A DNA stretch of 62,344 nucleotides, counting the filler, from Choristocarpus tenellus KU-1152 (Eukaryota > Protista > Phaeophyceae), in NCBI GenBank assembly GCA_964200185.2. It is 10 parts of 10 records of this genome, joined end to end, with 100 filler letters (N's around TTAATTAATTAA, not from the genome) between each part and the next. Parts side by side here need not be neighbours in the genome. Positions count along the whole stretch, not along the records: positions 1 to 8,756 come from CAXNAD020004364.1; 9 more parts are not named here. One strand, written 5' to 3'. Position 1 is the stretch's first letter; every line of letters begins with the position of its first letter. Shown here piece by piece: positions 1 through 8,756 of the stretch. The notes under the pieces were generated by a model. The model did no database searches. It was not told where the DNA came from and worked only from the letters and a program-made list of their open reading frames with translations. The translations under genes and the position numbers were made by a program.

Positions 1-399
1 CTGGTGGAGGCCACAGTGGAGGCATTCGATGTGTACCCCCTGGAGACACTAGAGCACGTCTGTCAGAGCATCTTCGCAGTCTACGGTGAAGTACTGGGGT
101 CCAAGGGTGACGTCTTTCAAAATTCCCCATCTTAGCAAGGAAAAGGCTGTGACGGCGGGCAAGCACCCCCGAAAATGCCCTGGTGGATGCAGCAAAATAC
201 CATGCTGGAATAGAGTTTTTAGGGGTCAGGTGGCGGAATTATAGATTGAGGTAGGCTACCCCATTTTGCTTGAGATGTTGGTGGGTAACCTTTTAGTGTC
301 TCCACAATACACCCATAAAATATGAACATGTGAAAGATTGTCTTTCCTGTTCATCGGGGCGGCAAAAGTTCTGTTTCACTTAATTCTAAACGGAGGAAG
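1..399 (+). mobile_element. 3' end of a degenerate DD39D (plant-type) mariner element: transposase C-terminus plus right TIR
   Basis: Frame 1 reads LVEATVEAFDVYPLETLEHVCQSIFAVYGEVLGSKGD, then KIPHLSKEK after a frameshift. This is the typical C-terminus of Soymar-type DD39D transposases. It is homologous to the copy at 31662-31774 (MMEATIEAFNVYSWKTPEGVWQSLFAVYSEVLGS). A Stowaway-like terminus AAACGGAGGAAG ends at 399. Confidence 0.8.
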
Positions 400-1615
400 A
401 ACACATTTACACATAGCTCACTGTGCTCCTAAATGCGCATCTTAATAAGGCCTATCTGTTTCGATATTTGTCTCTACCTCTTCATGGTTGACAAATGACC
501 ATTATAGGAAGATCGACAAGCACTACTTAAACGCATTCCCTAATCATAGCCATAATGAACATTTACTGTATCCACCACTAACGGAAAAAGAGAAAAAAAA
601 TTAAGGGGTCAAAGTTTCTGGGGGGGGGGGTGCCGGCATCCGTTTTTGACCCTAGGAAAAATGACCAAAACATTGCAGCAACAATTTCTCAACATCACTA
701 AGGAGAGACTGCATCATATTTAACACTGTTGAGCTTATATATTATAGGGCTCTACTGACGAAGAACATTCTGAAATGACCATGGGATGTTGATTAACTCA
801 ACTGAAGCCTCACCTGCTTCCACCTCAAATACTCCAACATGCAAGTAGTATCAAATCTCCCCAACCATTTCATACGCCAACCACACTAGTGATGAAGTTA
901 GCAAGAGGGACACAAGTGAAAATTGTTCAATACACATGCACTGCGTTGTTCTACAATTCCGCCTCAGCTACAAGCATACCCAATTGCCCCTTACTTCAAC
1001 CAGATAATGCTAGTTGAAAGTTCAATCTCTAGCCATGATTTCAAGCGGCTCAAAAACTCTTCAGCAGATGTTGCAATGTCCTCGTTCACAATATCCCCAC
1101 CAGAATTCTTGCAGTCATCACAATCTGCCCCCATCTATTGCAGTTGGAGTCAACAGTGGAAACCTCTTAGCAGACCTGCTTTTGCTGGCCGCCATTAGGG
1201 TAGCAGATCGGTCGAGTAATGGTTTGGAGGTCTTGAGGCTTGAAGGTTTGACAATCTAGACGTGGATGGAGGAGAGTAAGCATATGTAACTCATCAGTAT
1301 GCACCTGAGTCATTGCTATCTGTTAGAAGTAGAGGGAAAAGGCGAACATACCCATGGTTGATCAATCAACTGTGCTTCCCCTCTCAATACTTGCTGTCCC
1401 TTCTTACATTGTCCATACTGGATACATAGATGAGAAATTGTTGGCGAAACAGCAGATTCAAGAATGTTCTCATCCTTAGCTTGAGTGAGAATCTTCTCCT
1501 CCTGCTCATCAGCCTTCATGCTCAAAGGAGTCCTCACAAGGTGCAAGAGAAGCAGACAATTTCCCTTCTAGTTTTCTACGAATGTGATCTGTGGATCTTT
1601 CCAGGCTACACCTCT

Positions 1616-1868
1616 GAGCCAAAGTATCTTAGAGGGTAGGACCGCGTCCATTTGGAGGTCAAAATCCATTGTTGCAATTTTGATGAAAAATTTACTATCG
1701 TGTTTGTTAGGAAGTGTCAATGTCCTTGTTTCGGACACACCTTTTCATAACGTACAAATTTTACCTACCCCGAAACACTTTGGAGTAGGAAAATGTCATA
1801 AAAAAACCCATGGAGAGCCAAGCCCCAAATGGACAAACAGGGCAAAACTCGTACCCTCTAAGATACTT
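1616..1868 (+). mobile_element. MITE family A copy (right terminus truncated)
   Basis: Starts GAGCCAAAGTATCTTAGAGGGTA and ends TACCCTCTAAGATACTT. The internal sequence is shared with nine other copies in the window. Confidence 0.9.
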
Positions 1869-2229: not shown

Positions 2230-2719
2230 GAGTGAAGAGTATCTTAGAGGGTACGAGTTTTGCCCTGTTTGTCCATTTGCGGCTTGCCTTCAAACATTTC
2301 GGAGTAGGTAAAATGTGTACGTTATGAAAAGGTATGTCCGGAATAAGGATATTGCCGCTTCCTATCAAACATGATAGCCAAAATTACATCAAAATCACAA
2401 CATTGGATTTGGGCTCCCAAACGGACGCGACTCTACTCTCTAAGATAGAGTGAAAGTATCTTAGAGGGTGCAAGTTTTGCCCTGTTTGTCCATTTGGGGC
2501 TTGGCTCCCCTCGAGGTGTTTTATGATATATTACCTACTCCAAAAGATTTCGGAGTTGGTAGAATGTTTTCATTATGAAAAGGTGTGTCCAGAACAAGGA
2601 TATTGACAATTCCTAACAAATACGATTGTCAAAGTTACATCGAAATCGCAATATTGGATTTTATCCCTCAAATGAACGCGGCTCTACCCTCTAAGATACT
2701 TTGGCTCATACTTTGACTC
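2230..2719 (-). mobile_element. MITE family A copy with internal deletion, its terminus split by a nested copy
   Basis: The TSD TGGA lies at 2226-2229 and 2720-2723. The terminal CTCTAAGATA|CTTTGACTC is interrupted by the 2448-2707 copy. Confidence 0.85.
2448..2707 (-). mobile_element. MITE family A full copy nested in the TIR of another copy
   Basis: Runs GAGTGAAAGTATCTTAGAGGG...CCCTCTAAGATACTTTGGCTC, with a 3-bp TSD ATA at 2445-2447 and 2708-2710. Confidence 0.9.
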
Positions 2720-3961
2720 TGGAGTTTCTGCAGCTGCTTGAACAAGGTGCCACACATGAACATTACATTGGTGCAAATCTCTGAAAAAAGCAAATGGGTA
2801 GCGATAACCACTACAATTAAGACACAAGTATTTCACCACAAATAATGCCAAAGATTTGGAACATCCCATAATTCCTTTGTTACAACTTCTATCAAGAATT
2901 CGGAGTTGGAGGTTGTAGTACTTCAATATCAAAAAGATTTATTGCCTGAAGCTCTGAGTCCAATTGTACCGACGACAATTCATTCTGTTTCAAAGCACAA
3001 AAGTGCCAGTCAAGTGGTTCAGCACATTCTTACACCATGCGAACAAGTTCTGCCAGACTTCCAAGCCTCGCAGTGCTACGGTATGTTCAAAATCACTGTT
3101 GTCTAGATGAACTCATCCTGCTGTGGTCTGCAGTGAGAAGAAGAATCCGAGTTCAAGAGTTTGGATACTTAGTGGCTGGGCAAGTTGGTGGTGGCTCCCC
3201 AGGGATGAGGAAAACCAAAAAACGGTCGGAGACCATATCAGACCACCTAAAATGCAGATGGGCCCAGTCAAACATGTAGTCAAAGACATGCTCAATGTCA
3301 TTTTTCAGGATGCTGCTCATGATGAAGGCCACCCTATCAAACAAGAGGTCAGTGTTCAAGATCGTTTGACACCACCCAAACTTTTTTGAGGAGATTTTTG
3401 AAAAAGCAAAAATATGTTACTATAAATTATAAAAGTTGATCAAATTTCACCCGTACAAGAACTCACACATCAATATAGGACAGAAGAAGAGATCATTGTC
3501 TACTGAACAAATAACTAAACTCTCTGCCAATATCTTGACAAAGGCATCAGCACAATAACCATAAATTAGGAGAACCTCAGAAAAAGTGCCTTAGCTCTGC
3601 AAAATAACAGAGGAAAGATCCCATACATGAACACATTACAAGAAACTGGTATCAGACGAAATGCATATTGTAGCAAGGCAACGGCACCAAGAATGTGCAC
3701 CTCAAGGCCTTACAAAATCTATCAGTGCAGAGGATCACAACCTTGACACTCAAACCTGAAAAAAAAATCTACTTTACATGAAGGAGTGAGGGATAAAATA
3801 TGTTACTCAAAAAAACACTTGAAAAACGTCAATAGAAGAACCAAAACAATATCAGTAATTATATAAAGAAAATTGCCAACAAAACAGGTCACCAAAACCT
3901 CACGCAACAAAAAGCTCACAAACGTAGTAACTCCAAAAAACAAAAACTCTGTTGTTCACAC

Positions 3962-6900
3962 CTTAGATTCTCCCATCGCATCCAGCAAGAATCTCATCAT
4001 CTCCACATTTCCACTCTCAGCAGCTACAATCACAACTGACATTCCACAGTTATCCTTCGCAAGCAGCTGTTCAGAAAACTGTTGCGATTTGGCACACACA
4101 CAATCAACAACCATGAGAACCATCACTATTATTGAAATAACTGCAAGGCACAAGACCACATAGCAAGTCATGCGATCAAGCAGGGTCTGTTTGTTTTACT
4201 TCCAACAACACCATACCAAGTGTGCTAAACAGGTGTATGTTTGAGCATAGAAAGGGAGTCACAAACCACCAACAAAACTCACCTGTGTGTAAAATAAGCA
4301 GTGTAGAAAAGAACAATCAAACGCTTACATTCAAATTTTCGTCCTAACACCATGCTTACCTTCAAATGCACAATGGATGGTGGCATACACTGAGTAATGC
4401 AGTGATGCATGTAACAAATCAAGCATATCTCAGTATAGAGGGCTTGACTGCTTATCTCTTATAATTCAATCAAACAAGAGATCAAAATAACACAAAGTCA
4501 AAATCCAAAACTCCAGAGATAAGAAATCAGCTGTCCTCACCTTAGCTTCTCCCATCGCATCCTGCAAAAATCTCATAATCTCCACTTTTCCACTTCTAGC
4601 AGCAAACATCACAACTGGCCTTTCACCGATATCCTTGGCAAGCAGTTCTTCACAAAACTGTTGGGAGGTGGCACACACAACAATCAAAGAGTCAGTGTGG
4701 GGACCATCAACATCATAGGCATATCTTACAAGGCATAAAACCTCATTGCAAGTTATGTGATCAAGCAGGGTCCGCTTGCTCCACTTCCAATATGATATCC
4801 TCTCTGCTCAATACGTCTATGTTTCTCTATAGACAGCAAGTCACACGCCTCCAATAAACCTCATCTGTGTCTTGCTTGCAGAATAAGCACACCCCTGTAA
4901 CATTGCAGAAAAGCACAATTGAGGGTTTGCATCCAAAAGTGATCCTATCACTGTGCTTACCTTCAAAATGCACAATGGATGGTGGCATATACTGAGTACT
5001 GCAGTAATGTACGTTACAAATCAATGCGCATCTCGGCATAGAGATTTGACTGCCTATCTCTTACAACTCAATCTAACAAGAGATCAAAATAACATAAACC
5101 AAAATCCAAAGCTCCACAGGTAATAAATCTTCTGTCCTCACCTTAGCATCTCCCATCACATCCAGAAAAAATCTCATCATCTCCACTTTGCCACTTTCAA
5201 CAGCAAACATCACAACTGACCTTCCAGAGAAATCCTTAGTAGTGAGTTCTTCAGAAACCTGTCAGGAGGTGGCACACACAACAATCAAAGAGTCAGTGTG
5301 GGGAACATCATAGTCAAAGTACCTTAGAGGGTAGAGCCGCGTCCGTTTGGGGGTCAAAATCCAATGTTCCGATTTTGATGTAATTTTGGCTATTGTGCTT
5401 GTTAGGAAGTGTCAATATCCTTGTTCCAGACACACCTTTTCATAACGTATACATTTTACCTACTCCGAAACATTTTGGAGTAGGAAAATGCCATAAAAAA
5501 CCCGTGGGAAGCCAAGCCCAAAACGGACAACAAGTCAAAACTCGTACCCTAACCCTAACATACTTTCACTCTCAACATCATTGACATACCTGCAATGCAC
5601 AAAGGCTCATGGCCAGTTATGTGATCAAGCAAGGTCTGTTTCTTCCACTTTCCACAAAATATCCACCCTGCTCAACAAGCATATGGTTAACTATAGAGAG
5701 CAAGTCACACACCATCAATAAATCTCATCTGTTTCTTGCTTGCAGAATAAGTACAAACCTGTCACATTGCAGAAAAGAACAGTCAAGGGCTTACATCCAA
5801 AAGTGATCCTTTCACCATACTTACCTTTGAAATGCTCAATGCATCGCGTGGCTTGTACTAAAGACAGCAGTGATGCATGTAGCAAACCAATGCACATCTC
5901 AGCATAGAGAGCTTGATCGCCTATCTCTTATTATTCAATCAAACAAGAGACCAAAATAACACAAAGTCAAAATCCAAAACTCCAAAGATAAGAAATCTTC
6001 TGCCCTCACCTTAGCTTCTCCCATCGCAACCTGCAAAATTACCATTATCTCCACACTTCCACTCTGAGCAGCAAACATCACACCTGATGTATCACCGTTA
6101 TCCTTGGCAAGCAGTTCTTCACAAAACTGTTGGGAGGTGGCACACACAACACCAACGAGTCAGTGTGGGGACCATCAATATAATCGGCATATCTTGCAAT
6201 AGACAAAAGCTCATGACAAGTTATGTGATCAAGCACGGTCTATTTGTTTCACTTACAACAACATCATATCTGGCCTGGACATCATGTGTATCTTTGTCTA
6301 TAGAGAGCAAGTCACACACCACCAATATACCTCACCTGTGTCCTGCCTGCAGAACAAGCACAACCCTGTCACATTGCAGAAAAGAACAATCGGTGGTTTA
6401 CATCCAAAATTCATACTCCCATAATGTTAGAACATGAATTTGTTCAATGCATTGTGGCTTGTACAGAACACTGACATTATGTACATACCAATCACTGACA
6501 TTATGTACATACCATATACCAATCACTGACATTATGTACATACCACATACCAATCACTGACATTATGTATATACCACATACCAATCACTGACAGTATGTA
6601 CATACCATATACCAATCACTGACATTATGTATATACCACATACCAATCACTGACATTATGTATATACCACATACCAATCACTGACATTATGTACATACCA
6701 TATACCAATCACTGACATTATGTACATACCACATACCAATCACTGACATTATGTATATACCACATACCAATCACTGACATTATGTACATACCATATACCA
6801 ATCATTGACATTATGTATATACCATATACCAATCACTGACATTATGTACATACCATATACCAATCACTGACATTATGTATATACCAATCCAATGAATATA

Positions 6901-8338
6901 TCTCTTCATAGAGGGCTCGACTACTAGTCACTTTTTATTCTATCAAACAAAGATCAAAACAACACAAACTAAAATCTAAAACTCCAGGAATAAGAAATCT
7001 TCTGTTCTCACCTTAGCATCTCCCATCACATCCAGGAAAAACCTCATCATCTCCACTTTTCCATTTCTAGCAGCATACATTATAACGGATATCCCATAGT
7101 CATTCTTGGTAAGCAGTTCTTCGGAAAACTGTTGGGAGGTGGCACACACAGCAATCAAAGGGTCAGTGTGGAGACCATCAACATCATCAACATATCTTGC
7201 AAGGTACAAAGGCTCATGGCCAGTTAGGCAACCAAGCAGGGTTGCTTAGTCCACTTCCAACAACACCAATACCAAGTTTGCTCAAAACGTGTATGGTTCT
7301 CTACAGAGAGCAAGTCACACATCACAAATAAACTTCATCTGTTTCTTGCTTGCAGAATAAGCACAATCCTGTCACATTGCAGAAAAGAACAGTCAAGGGC
7401 TTACATCCAAAAGTGATCCTTTCACCATACTTACCTTCAAGGTGCTCAATGCATCGTGGCCTGTACTAAAGACAGCAGTGATGCATATAACAAACCAATG
7501 CACATCTCAGCATAGAGAGCTTGATTGCCTATCTCTTATAATTCAATCAAACAAGAGACCAAAATAACACAAAGTCAAAATCCAAAACTCCAGAGATAAG
7601 AAATCTTCTGCGCTCACCTCAGCTTCTCCCATCGCACCCTGCAAAATTACCATTATCTCCACACTTCCACTCTCAGCAGCAAACATCACAACTGACCTTT
7701 TACCGTTATCCTTGGCAAGCAGTTCTTCACAAAACTGTAGCGAGGTGGCACACACAAAAAATTCAAATGTTCAGTGTGGGGACCTTCAACATTATAGGCA
7801 TATCTCACAAGGCACAAAAACTCATTTCAAGTTATGCAATCGAGCAGGGTCTATTTGTTTTACTTCCAATATCATATATACCCTGGACATCATGCGTATG
7901 TTTCTCTATAGAGAGCAAGTCACACACCACCAACAAATCTCATCTGTGTCTTGCTTGCAGAAGAAGGACAGCCCTGTCACATTGCAGAAAGGAACAGGCA
8001 GGGGTTTACATCCAAAAGTGATCCTATCACCATGCTTACCTTCAAAATGCACAATGGATGGTGGCATGTACTGAGTACTGCAGTGATGTACGTTACAAAT
8101 CAATTCCACGTCTTAGCATAGAGATTTGACTGTCAATCTCTTATAATTCAATCAAACAAGAGAGAAAAATAACACAAAACAAAATCTAAAACACCACAGG
8201 AAATAAATCTCCTGCCCTCACCTTGGCATCTCCCATCACATCCAGCAAAAAACTCATCATATCCACTTTGCCACTTCTGGCAGCAAACATTACAACCGTT
8301 ATTCCATCGTTTTCCTTGGCAAGCAGTTCTTCACAAAC
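3962..8338 (-). CDS. Ankyrin-repeat protein (partial): seven 117-nt phase-0 exons, one 39-aa ankyrin-like repeat per exon
   Basis: Exons in transcription order: 8222-8338 VCEELLAKENDGITVVMFAARSGKVDMMSFLLDVMGDAK; 7618-7734 FCEELLAKDNGKRSVVMFAAESGSVEIMVILQGAMGEAE; 7012-7128 FSEELLTKNDYGISVIMYAARNGKVEMMRFFLDVMGDAK; 6010-6126 FCEELLAKDNGDTSGVMFAAQSGSVEIMVILQVAMGEAK; 5142-5258 VSEELTTKDFSGRSVVMFAVESGKVEMMRFFLDVMGDAK; 4541-4657 FCEELLAKDIGERPVVMFAARSGKVEIMRFLQDAMGEAK; 3962-4078 FSEQLLAKDNCGMSVVIVAAESGNVEMMRFLLDAMGESK. All have CAG acceptors and GT donors, no stops and identical length. They match the ankyrin pattern D..G.T.L..AA..G..E....LL. The 5' and 3' exons were not found. Confidence 0.85.
5311..5571 (+). 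mobile_element. MITE family A copy inserted in an ankyrin-array intron
   Basis: The 3-bp TSD TCA lies at 5308-5310 and 5572-5574. Removing the element restores CATCAACATCA, as seen in the paralogous introns (empty-site confirmation). Confidence 0.92.
6469..6890. repeat. 31-bp minisatellite, about 13 copies
   Basis: The unit ACCAATCACTGACATTATGTA(C/T)ATACCA(T/C)AT recurs every 31 bp from 6487 to 6859. Confidence 0.97.
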
Positions 8339-8756
8339 CTGTTGGGGGGTGGCACACACAATAATCAAAGAGCCAGTGTGGAGACCATCAACATCATTGA
8401 GACATACCTGCAAGCCACAAAACCTCATGACAAGTTAGGTGGTCAAGCAAGGTCTGTTTGTTCCACTTCCAATACCATATGCACTCTGCTCAATAGGTGT
8501 ATGTTTCTATATAGGGAGCAAGTCATACACCATCAATACAACCCAACTGCGTCATGCTTGCAGAATAAGCACACCCCTGTCACATTGCAGAAAAGAACAA
8601 TCAAGGGCTTGCATCCAAAAGTGATCATTTCACCATGCTTACCTTTGAAATGACTAAAGATAGCAGTGATGTGGCGCAAAGTATCTCGGGGGGGGGGGGG
8701 GGCTACACTAGGGGGTCTATTTGGGCCTCCCCAGGGAGAAGGGAACTTAAATTATA

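What the first reader, a model, noticed from the sequence alone, without database searches (positions are those of the whole stretch)
3962..8338. One-repeat-per-exon ankyrin cassette array: candidate exon-shuffling or combinatorial-splicing receptor
Seen: seven exons of exactly 117 nt, all phase 0-0 and open, each encode one 39-aa ankyrin-like repeat inside a ~600-bp unit whose intron is duplicated with it. Any exon can therefore be skipped, duplicated or swapped without breaking the frame. A further intron unit runs into the contig end, so the array is probably longer. Established: Ectocarpus ROCO-LRR and NB-ARC-TPR candidate immune receptors have the same one-repeat-per-exon architecture with conserved flanking introns (Zambounis et al. 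2012). Inference: this is an ankyrin-based equivalent that diversifies a binding surface by unequal recombination and/or alternative splicing. I do not know of such a system described for brown-algal ankyrins.
Basis: partly seen in the sequence, partly recalled or inferred. Interest (0 to 1): 0.88.

Follow-up and report, generated by a model that had tools for sequence, protein, structure and literature searches.

The report
One-ankyrin-repeat-per-exon gene array
A brown-alga gene (Choristocarpus tenellus) encodes each 39-residue ankyrin repeat on its own 117-base exon; the exon-plus-intron unit has been copied in tandem and consecutive exons are spliced in order, but nothing found so far shows that it is a receptor or that its exons are spliced in varying combinations.

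Summary
The minus strand carries seven 117-nt exons, each bounded by AG and GT, in phase 0 and open. They sit in ~600-bp units whose introns were duplicated along with them.

The contig belongs to the brown alga Choristocarpus tenellus.

The exons are used:
- A 264-nt contig in run X3 joins e6, e5 and e4 exactly at the predicted borders. The two DNA-like runs do not show these joints.
- NCBI's partial model CAM9489680.1 equals e3-e2-e1.

The repeat is an ankyrin relative, a 33-residue core plus a 6-residue linker. Its profile hits designed ankyrin proteins at E 5.8e-15.

Exons diverge as fast as introns (identity 0.80 for both; dN/dS about 0.9). Yet no exon has a stop, an indel or a lost splice site, which is unlikely under neutrality.

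Identity between units is mosaic and two exon types (A and B) alternate. Both point to unequal crossing-over or gene conversion.

Paralogous arrays exist. C518 has 14 exon candidates of 117 nt, and C8926 probably continues this gene upstream.

I found no NB-ARC, COR or other domain in the flanks, no orphan or inverted exons, no skipped-exon junction and no robust sign of positive selection.

Verdict: this is a real ankyrin gene built from one-repeat cassette exons. The receptor and combinatorial-splicing reading is unsupported.

The parts
8668..8756 (.). Start of a MITE with a poly-G tract and a terminal AAAGTATCT motif. It interrupts the intron upstream of e7, and the contig ends inside it.
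   Evidence: Read from the sequence. An 88% match to C8926:12-80. Both contigs break at the same intron position.
8339..8667 (-). Partial intron I8: the acceptor-side two thirds of a repeat-unit intron upstream of e7.
   Evidence: Aligns with the other introns at 64-73% identity.
8222..8338 (-). Exon e7 (type B), 117 nt, one 39-aa ankyrin-like repeat.
7735..8221 (-). Intron I7 (487 nt).
7618..7734 (-). Exon e6 (type A). Its 3' 56 nt are joined to e5 in X3 contig record 17.
7129..7617 (-). Intron I6 (489 nt), 89% identical to I4.
7012..7128 (-). Exon e5 (type B). It is present whole in X3 contig record 17, between e6 and e4.
6127..7011 (-). Intron I5 (885 nt). It contains a 31-bp minisatellite of 13.3 copies at 6483-6893.
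6010..6126 (-). Exon e4 (type A). Its 5' 91 nt are in X3 contig record 17, and the joint lies exactly at 6126.
5259..6009 (-). Intron I4 (751 nt), with a ~250-bp MITE inserted at about 5316-5566.
   Evidence: (extreme summed depth over the MITE).
5142..5258 (-). Exon e3 (type B). Its C-terminal 23 codons begin the NCBI model CAM9489680.1.
4658..5141 (-). Intron I3 (484 nt).
4541..4657 (-). Exon e2 (A-like). It is present whole in the NCBI model.
4079..4540 (-). Intron I2 (462 nt).
3962..4078 (-). Exon e1, the most divergent and the last repeat exon. Reading through its donor gives Val and then a stop.
3956..3958 (-). In-frame TGA one codon after e1. It is the likely end of the coding sequence if the e1 donor is not used.
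   Evidence: The sequence downstream is not homologous to the unit introns.

Best explanation
This is the 3' two thirds of a transcribed, ankyrin-repeat-only gene of the brown alga Choristocarpus tenellus.

Each 39-residue module is a 33-residue ankyrin core plus a 6-residue linker. It is encoded by one symmetric phase-0 exon of 117 nt. The exon and its ~485-nt intron have been multiplied as a unit by tandem duplication, partly as two-unit A/B blocks, and later reshuffled by unequal crossing-over or gene conversion with breakpoints in the introns.

The exons are spliced consecutively into one long ankyrin solenoid. The most likely role is a cytosolic protein-protein interaction scaffold whose variable hairpin and helix-1 face binds partners.

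Shown: the exon structure, homology of the introns, use of the splice borders for e6-e5-e4, the ankyrin relationship, the paralogous arrays, and the absence of other domains in the flanks.

Inferred: the recombination mechanism, the adjacency of contig C8926, the C-terminal end just after e1, and the scaffold function.
For: - Structure.
- Organism and public model (e3-e2-e1).
- Spliced e6-e5-e4 contig. It is 264 nt = 56 + 117 + 91, its joints lie at 6126 and at the 3' border of an exon, the 8 mismatches and the T>C at 5172 are exactly those of e5, and X1/X2 do not show these joints.
- Ankyrin relationship. The profile of the seven exons hits the designed ankyrin 1N0R at E 5.8e-15, DARPins, and 1008 proteins at E<1e-10. 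Five of seven exons give sub-threshold Ank Pfam hits.
- Constraint on frame. Under intron-like neutral change, P(no stop in 7 exons) is about 0.013, about 6.7 indel events are expected against 0 seen, and P(all 28 splice-site bases kept) is about 0.02.
- Variation is concentrated at repeat positions 10-13 and 21. These align with the positions that differ between the repeats of a DARPin: (permutation p 0.0008).
- Recombination. U6 and U4 are 93-97% identical over the exon plus the first ~250 nt of intron, then ~83%. U7 and U3 are 90% identical in mid-intron but 79% in the exon.
- Family. C518 has 14 exon candidates of exactly 117 nt; exons also occur on C8926, C21917, C5584 and C15943; C16318 holds a decayed array.
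- Ankyrin-like N-terminal exon(s) on C8926 and C518.
- No NB-ARC or COR on these contigs and no Pfam domain in the flanking ORFs.
Against: - Exon divergence equals intron divergence (0.80 and 0.80), dN/dS is about 0.9 and codon positions differ little. Constraint on the protein sequence is therefore weak, and neutral drift of a young array cannot be fully excluded.
- The neutral simulations assume a star phylogeny, so they overstate significance.
- Run X3 is not on record as RNA. Its RNA nature is inferred from exon-only coverage and the spliced contig.
- The NCBI model is an annotation, not an experiment.
- Neither end of the gene is shown. The adjacency of C8926 rests on a shared MITE breakpoint with only 88% identity in the overlap.
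- The AlphaFold2 model of the 81-aa fragment has low confidence (pLDDT 51), so the fold is not confirmed.
- The ~70-75% conserved blocks downstream of e1 that are shared with C5584 and C15943 are unexplained.
Confidence: 0.72

Rival explanations
1. One reading: the array is a diversity-generating recognition module, an ankyrin counterpart of the brown-algal LRR-ROCO and NB-ARC-TPR candidate immune receptors. Exon number and order would vary through unequal recombination between strains and/or through alternative inclusion of cassette exons, producing many binding surfaces.
For: - Every exon is symmetric and of equal length, so skipping or duplication keeps the frame.
- Exons change at least as fast as introns. 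The youngest A-type trio (e4, e6, e8) differs almost only by replacement changes: 7:1, 5:0 and 9:1 non-synonymous to synonymous.
- Variability sits on the canonical ankyrin binding face.
- Mosaic identity shows ongoing exchange between units.
- Run X2 carries an e4 variant with two replacement changes that match e8.
- The exon design, a 33-residue repeat plus a 6-residue linker, parallels the 34 + 8 TPR exons.
- LRR cassette exons in Ectocarpus ROCO genes are alternatively spliced.
Against: - No signalling domain (NB-ARC, COR or any Pfam family) lies on the array contigs or their flanks.
- Both available junction sets are strictly consecutive.
- There are no inactivated, intronic or reverse-strand exons, which were the hallmark used by Zambounis et al..
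- No docking/selector-type complementarity was found.
- The rate at the most variable codons is not above that of the most variable triplets in intron windows: 29.5% of the windows reach it.
- The N:S excess in the A-type trio is not significant.
- The family is small, about 30 exons on 8-9 contigs.
Confidence: 0.13
2. The array is a decaying or functionless tandem duplication. The units would drift neutrally, and the transcripts would be background or annotation artefacts without a protein role.
For: - Exon identity equals intron identity (0.80 and 0.80).
- dN/dS is about 0.9 and third-codon positions are barely more variable than the first and second.
- Transposon and minisatellite insertions sit in the introns.
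- At least one paralogous array (C16318) is clearly decayed, with stops and a frameshift.
- Some C518 exons lack AG or GT at the extrapolated borders.
- No run on record as RNA holds the locus.
Against: - All seven exons, and e8, keep their frame, their exact length and both splice dinucleotides, against neutral expectations of about 0.013, 0.001-0.1 and 0.02.
- The exon shows more site-to-site heterogeneity than 99.6% of intron windows. Nine invariant codons fall on ankyrin scaffold positions.
- A precisely spliced e6-e5-e4 contig exists.
- The 117-nt module is preserved in the much older paralog C518, at about 30-45% aa identity.
Confidence: 0.1
3. The 600-bp unit holds a second, unrecognised exon. 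The conserved intron stretch that ends in ...TTGAAG|GTAAG and is followed by a ...GTGACAG acceptor-like site would then be coding, making the true module bipartite.
For: Minus-strand open frames of 44-70 aa recur at the same intron position in several units, and donor- and acceptor-like motifs are conserved there.
Against: - The X3 contig joins e6, e5 and e4 directly, with a length of exactly 56 + 117 + 91 nt and no intervening exon.
- The NCBI model also joins e3, e2 and e1 directly.
- This stretch is no better conserved than the rest of the intron.
Confidence: 0.03

Closest known systems
Ectocarpus LRR-ROCO and NB-ARC-TPR cassette-exon genes (Zambounis et al. 2012, PMC3341825; Teng et al. 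2024, PMC11378527)
   Same: It occurs in a brown alga. One structural repeat is encoded per exon of fixed length that is a multiple of three (LRR 72 nt; TPR 42 aa = 34 + linker; here 39 aa = 33 + linker). The exons are multiplied in tandem and paralogous arrays and decayed copies exist.
   Different: The repeat class is ankyrin. [quoted passage not shown] Further differences: no ROC-COR or NB-ARC partner domain was found, there are no intronic or reverse-strand orphan exons, no alternative splicing was seen, and positive selection is not shown.
Animal ankyrin genes with single-repeat exons (for example the 99-bp repeat exons of the human ANK1 membrane-binding domain; from my own knowledge, not checked here)
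   Same: One ankyrin repeat per symmetric exon, giving a long solenoid built from constitutively spliced cassette-like exons.
   Different: In the animal genes the introns are unrelated and the repeats are old. Here the introns are still about 80% identical, so the array is young or is being homogenised. The module here is 39 residues, not 33.
Designed consensus ankyrin repeats and DARPins (PDB 1N0R, 7P3I and others)
   Same: The profile aligns over the hairpin, helix 1 and helix 2 (query positions 7-34) at E 5.8e-15. The variable positions 10, 11, 13 and 21 coincide with the positions that differ between DARPin repeats.
   Different: The TPLH motif is replaced by S-V-V-M. Six extra residues lie between helix 2 and the next hairpin. 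The fold itself is not confirmed (pLDDT 51).
Fungal NLR genes with highly similar ANK, TPR or WD repeats that evolve by unequal crossing-over (Dyrka et al. 2014, PMC4986451; listed, not read)
   Same: Internally similar repeats, recombination between repeats, and variation on the binding face.
   Different: From my own knowledge, the fungal repeats lie within one exon and are attached to NACHT or NB-ARC domains. Here each repeat has its own exon and no nucleotide-binding domain was found.
Dscam-type clusters of mutually exclusive exons
   Same: Tandem arrays of homologous, frame-preserving exons.
   Different: Here consecutive exons are all included. No docking/selector complementarity was found.

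Membership tests
Ankyrin repeat (Pfam clan Ank) | Significant sequence match to ankyrin-repeat profiles or proteins | tested here: met
   The profile of the seven exons hits 1N0R '4 ankyrin repeats' at E 5.8e-15, DARPins, ankyrin-1/2 and RNase L. It also hits 1008 library proteins at E<1e-10 with multiple stretches.
Ankyrin repeat (Pfam clan Ank) | Score above Pfam's gathering threshold | tested here: not met
   Single exons score 13-22 bits against cut-offs of 21-27. The 81-aa model P0008 scores 21.6 against 27.3 for Ank_2 and 22.0 against 22.3 for Ank_3.
Ankyrin repeat (Pfam clan Ank) | 33-residue period with a TPLH motif at the start of helix 1 | tested here: not met
   The period is 39 residues in all 20 aligned exons of the family. 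The motif position reads S-V-V/L-M.
Ankyrin repeat (Pfam clan Ank) | Hairpin plus helix-turn-helix fold stacking into a solenoid | tested here: inconclusive
   AlphaFold2 on P0008 with a 21-row alignment gives helices at 38-45 and 48-58 plus an extra helix at 60-68. Mean pLDDT is 51 and pTM 0.32, so no fold search was run.
Brown-algal exon-shuffling candidate receptors (Zambounis type) | One repeat per exon, with adjacent phase-0 exons of identical length | tested here: met
   There are seven exons of 117 nt here, an eighth on C8926 and 14 on C518.
Brown-algal exon-shuffling candidate receptors (Zambounis type) | Repeat array fused to a signalling core (ROC-COR or NB-ARC) | tested here: not met
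   NB-ARC matches lie on other contigs (C301, C11065, C1147, C10630) and COR-A has no match. Flanking ORFs of C4364, C8926 and C518 have no Pfam hit. Caveat: the contigs are short and only ORFs of about 45 aa or more were scanned.
Brown-algal exon-shuffling candidate receptors (Zambounis type) | Inactivated or reverse-strand repeat exons inside the introns | tested here: not met
   nhmmer with the exon DNA profile finds only the seven exons on C4364, all on the coding strand. The six-frame protein profile agrees. A decayed array exists at another locus, C16318.
Brown-algal exon-shuffling candidate receptors (Zambounis type) | Positive selection on exposed repeat residues | tested here: inconclusive
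   Overall dN/dS is 0.87-0.91. At the hypervariable codons pN is 0.44 against an intron distance of 0.20, but 29.5% of intron windows have equally fast top triplets.
Brown-algal exon-shuffling candidate receptors (Zambounis type) | Alternative inclusion of cassette exons | tested here: inconclusive
   Only consecutive junctions were seen, e6-e5-e4 and e3-e2-e1. Coverage is too thin, and contig-based, to exclude isoforms.
Dscam-like mutually exclusive exon cluster | A docking site complementary to a selector in each intron, with one exon chosen per transcript | tested here: not met
   Neighbouring exons are co-included. The only inverted repeats are two 20-nt pairs at 80% complementarity, which is chance level.

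The most novel reading that the evidence does not exclude
The 117-nt ankyrin cassettes are a third repeat class used by brown algae as a recombining recognition repertoire. On this reading exon number and sequence differ between individuals through unequal crossing-over and gene conversion, and possibly between transcripts through cassette skipping. The ankyrin-only proteins would act as decoys or adaptors that feed into separate signalling partners, not as receptors with a built-in signalling domain.
Probability: 0.12. Interest if true: 0.8.

Novelty: new variant of a known kind. Interest (0 to 1): 0.45.

Why it matters
Cassette-exon repeat arrays are the basis of the proposal that brown algae generate receptor diversity by exon shuffling. 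For Ectocarpus that architecture was reported as essentially confined to LRR and TPR genes. This locus shows that an early-diverging brown alga also builds ankyrin proteins this way. The intron identity is still readable, two alternating exon types are visible, the recombination tracts can be traced, and at least some junctions are spliced as predicted. It therefore gives a clean, small system (about 30 exons in the genome) in which to measure how fast such arrays gain, lose and exchange exons, and whether the process is adaptive or only structural. It also shows that the public annotation of this gene, an 81-aa partial model, misses most of it.

Tried and rejected
- The look-up of sequencing runs gave no run on record as RNA, only three coded runs of one study.
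- The look-up of encoding contigs found no record for P0008.
- The search for homologous proteins found only P0008 itself when queried with P0008, and nothing when queried with the C8926 N-terminal ORF. The length filter excludes full-length relatives, so these blanks say nothing about other brown algae.
- None of the 150 best library proteins has a 39-residue period.
- The AlphaFold2 model was too poor to use for fold search.
- Blocks downstream of e1 that are shared with C5584 and C15943 were tested for coding signal in all six frames. No frame is consistently open. An in-frame 21-nt indel is suggestive but unresolved.
- A second exon inside the intron was considered and rejected on the direct exon-exon joints.
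- Dscam-like docking/selector pairing was considered and rejected.
- An X1/X2 joint 2727>5314 and many joints inside 5336-5542 are MITE-to-MITE assembly paths, not variants of the gene.
All searches were made exon by exon or with the public model P0008.
Full report
**1. What is in the sequence**

The window is the whole of contig C4364 (8756 bp) of a 164-Mb assembly in 27,310 contigs.

The feature lies on the minus strand. Seven stretches of exactly 117 nt are each preceded by a pyrimidine-rich tract ending in ACAG and followed by GTG(A/T)G. All are open in the same phase. Each encodes 39 residues that align without gaps:
- e7: 8222-8338
- e6: 7618-7734
- e5: 7012-7128
- e4: 6010-6126
- e3: 5142-5258
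- e2: 4541-4657
- e1: 3962-4078

The six introns between them are 462-489 nt. Two are longer: I4 carries a ~250-bp MITE, and I5 carries a 31-bp minisatellite of 13 copies. The introns are homologous from donor to acceptor at 64-89% identity.

Upstream of e7 lies a further two thirds of an intron unit (8339-8667). It is cut by a poly-G MITE, and the contig ends inside that MITE.

A protein profile and a DNA profile of the exons find nothing else on either strand of the contig.

**2. Organism and public annotation**

A profile search of 1.8 billion proteins returned an 81-aa protein, P0008. It is exactly the last 23 codons of e3, all of e2 and the first 19 codons of e1. It is NCBI CAM9489680.1, 'unnamed protein product, partial [Choristocarpus tenellus]', and it lies on a contig of 8756 bp, which is this contig.

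The organism is thus a brown alga of an early-diverging lineage. The deposited annotation captures only three of the exons.

**3. Are the exons used?**

No run on record as RNA holds the locus. The three coded runs of one study were nevertheless laid on 2700-6460.

X1 and X2 cover introns and exons alike and so behave like DNA. Outside the MITE, X3 covers only exon sequence and one piece below e1.

X3 contains a 264-nt contig whose pieces lie on the minus strand as follows:
- 6126 down to 6036, with no mismatches. The joint is exactly at the first base of e4.
- Before that, 69 nt that end exactly at the 3' border of an exon, with 8 mismatches to e3.
- Before that, 53 nt matching the e4/e6 type.

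A register-by-register comparison identifies the pieces. The 69 nt are e5: it has 8 mismatches to e3 and carries the reported C at the position equivalent to 5172. The 53 nt are e6, with 1 mismatch to e4. And 56 + 117 + 91 = 264.

The contig is therefore e6-e5-e4 joined at the predicted borders. These joints are absent from the X1 and X2 contigs.

Together with the NCBI model, this gives two sets of consecutive junctions and no skipped one. That X3 is RNA is my inference from this pattern. Contigs cannot show the absence of minor isoforms.

**4. What the module is**

Single exons give sub-threshold Pfam ankyrin hits in five of seven cases.

The seven-exon profile matches designed consensus ankyrin proteins (1N0R at E 5.8e-15), DARPins, ankyrin-1/2 and RNase L. 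It also matches over a thousand library proteins at E<1e-10. The match covers positions 7-34: the hairpin, helix 1 and helix 2.

Two things differ from the canonical repeat. The TPLH motif reads S-V-V-M, and six extra residues separate helix 2 from the next hairpin. The module is thus 33 + 6 = 39 residues. This is a close formal parallel to the Ectocarpus TPR exons of 34 + 8 = 42 residues.

An AlphaFold2 model of P0008 shows the two helices and an extra helix over the linker. Its mean pLDDT is only 51, so I treat the fold as unconfirmed.

**5. The rest of the gene**

Reading through the e1 donor gives Val and then TGA. The sequence below e1 is unrelated to the unit introns. The ORFs there have no Pfam hit. 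The end of the coding sequence just after e1 is likely but inferred.

Upstream, contig C8926 starts with the same poly-G MITE in the same orientation. This is followed by the donor-side third of a unit intron, and then by a 117-nt A-type exon (311-427) that differs from e4 at five bases.

The intron on C8926 is interrupted at the same consensus position (within about 10 nt) at which the C4364 intron resumes. The A-type exon also continues the A/B alternation. I therefore take C8926 to be the upstream continuation, with probability about 0.6. The overlap inside the MITE is only 88% identical.

Further up C8926 lie:
- a 105-nt ankyrin-like exon (917-1021);
- a weaker ankyrin-like exon (within 2343-2510);
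- an exon (within 2901-3248) whose product resembles an ankyrin N-terminal cap and is homologous to the corresponding exon of the paralog on C518.

No other domain was found in 2.6 kb (C8926) and 5.8 kb (C518) upstream, nor downstream of the C518 array. NB-ARC matches lie on other contigs, and COR-A has no match in the assembly. The product looks like an ankyrin-only protein.

**6. Family**

C518 carries 14 exon candidates of exactly 117 nt at ~600-bp spacing on one strand. Most have AG/GT borders, and they are about 30-45% identical in protein to the exons here.

Exons of the same kind lie on C21917, C5584 and C15943. C16318 holds a decayed array with stops and a frameshift. A profile of 20 exons finds 30 matches on 8-9 contigs.

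The 117-nt module is therefore old and has been maintained, and arrays are born and die.

**7. How it evolves**

Mean pairwise identity is 0.80 for exons and 0.80 for introns. Codon positions 1, 2 and 3 give 0.84, 0.79 and 0.77. Mean dN/dS is about 0.9. It exceeds 1 among the youngest A-type exons, but the counts are small and the excess is not significant.

Nevertheless no exon has a stop, an indel or a lost splice dinucleotide. Under intron-like neutral change the expectations are:
- about 1.3% for no stop in seven exons;
- 6.7 indel events expected against none seen, or roughly 2-5 expected when alignment artefacts and shared ancestry are allowed for;
- about 2% for keeping all 28 splice-site bases.

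These figures assume independent lineages and are therefore optimistic, but they all point the same way.

Replacement changes cluster at repeat positions 10-13 and 21. These align with the positions that differ between the repeats of a DARPin (permutation p 0.0008 for the array and 7e-5 for the family). Scaffold positions are invariant: L5, A19, G23, V25, M28 and G36.

The exon is more heterogeneous from site to site than 99.6% of intron windows. The rate of its six fastest codons, however, is matched by 29.5% of intron windows. So there is constraint on the scaffold and freedom on the binding face. Positive selection is not shown.

Identity between units is mosaic:
- U6 and U4 share 93-97% over the exon and the first ~250 nt of intron, then fall to ~83%.
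- U7 and U3 share 90% in mid-intron but only 79% in the exon.

Together with the A/B alternation, this indicates duplication of two-unit blocks and later exchange with breakpoints in the introns.

**8. Comparison with what is known**

Zambounis et al. described 72-nt LRR exons in ROCO genes and 42-aa TPR exons in NB-ARC genes. They found inactivated and reverse-strand exons in the introns, and their genome-wide screen of Ectocarpus concluded that exon shuffling is overwhelmingly restricted to those two classes. Teng et al. added alternative splicing of LRR exons.

The present locus shares the cassette design and the tandem growth. It lacks the partner domain, the orphan exons and, as far as the thin data go, the alternative splicing.

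Single-repeat exons in animal ankyrin genes are a second precedent (from my own knowledge), but their introns are unrelated to one another.

I found no description of such an ankyrin array in brown algae in the papers searched. The search was limited, and orthologues in other brown algae could not be looked for with the tools at hand.

**9. Verdict**

The best reading is a transcribed ankyrin-only scaffold gene built from young cassette exons (confidence about 0.7). The diversity-generator reading remains possible (about 0.13) and is directly testable by long-read cDNA and by comparing isolates.

Only single exons by reference and the public model P0008 were used.

Noticed in passing
window 1616-1868, 2230-2447, 2448-2707 and about 5316-5566; also C21917, C15943, C518:6436-6698, C16318: A ~250-bp MITE family with termini AAAGTA(T/C)CTTAGAGGGTA... 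has four copies on this contig, two of them back to back. One copy sits inside intron I4. Summed contig depth over it in runs X1-X3 is four to five orders of magnitude above the flanks, so it is extremely abundant in this genome.
   Followed up: partly
window 8668-8756 and C8926 (L039) 1-175: A second MITE type shares the AAAGTATCT terminus but has long poly-G/poly-C tracts just inside both ends. Both contigs break in it, which suggests that the homopolymers caused the assembly gap.
   Followed up: partly
window 6483-6893: A 31-bp minisatellite of 13.3 copies with 94% matches lies inside intron I5. Degenerate copies extend to about 6390-6947.
   Followed up: no
window 6083 and 6096 (exon e4): The run X2 contig over e4 differs from the assembly at two bases. 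Both are replacement changes (Gly to Val, Gly to Ser), and both match the residues of exon e8 on C8926. X1 agrees with the assembly. This could be gene conversion between repeats, a strain difference or an unassembled extra unit.
   Followed up: partly
window 6128-6337 (acceptor side of intron I5): The only X1 contig here differs from the assembly at 8 bases and one inserted T, while neighbouring X1 contigs are identical to it. This points to a local assembly error, a collapsed unit or a second allele.
   Followed up: no
window 1366-1613, 1908-2222, 2806-2997, 3004-3352: Blocks below e1 are 68-76% identical to sequence downstream of the ankyrin exons on C5584 and to C15943, which carries a partial exon at its high-coordinate end. 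One alignment gap is 21 nt and another 3 nt (in frame), but no reading frame is consistently open in all three copies. This could be a conserved 3' region, a decayed neighbouring gene or a transposon.
   Followed up: partly
window 1-135, plus strand: An open frame runs in from the contig start and ends in a stop. By eye its product resembles the C-terminal end of a Tc1/mariner-type transposase. Pfam gave no hit, so this is unverified.
   Followed up: partly
C16318 (L042) 1359-1475, 2142-2257, 2847-2913: A decayed paralogous array: its exon-like units carry in-frame stops, a frameshift and a truncation.
   Followed up: partly
C518 (L038) 8174-8428, plus strand: An open frame on the strand opposite to the C518 array looks by eye like more canonical ankyrin repeats. 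It may be the start of a neighbouring ankyrin gene.
   Followed up: no
window 6048-6067 with 7155-7174 and 8365-8384: A 20-nt stretch of A-type exon e4 is 80% complementary to a conserved element about 25-45 nt upstream of the acceptors of e5 and e7. It is probably a chance match, but it is the only intron-exon pairing found.
   Followed up: no
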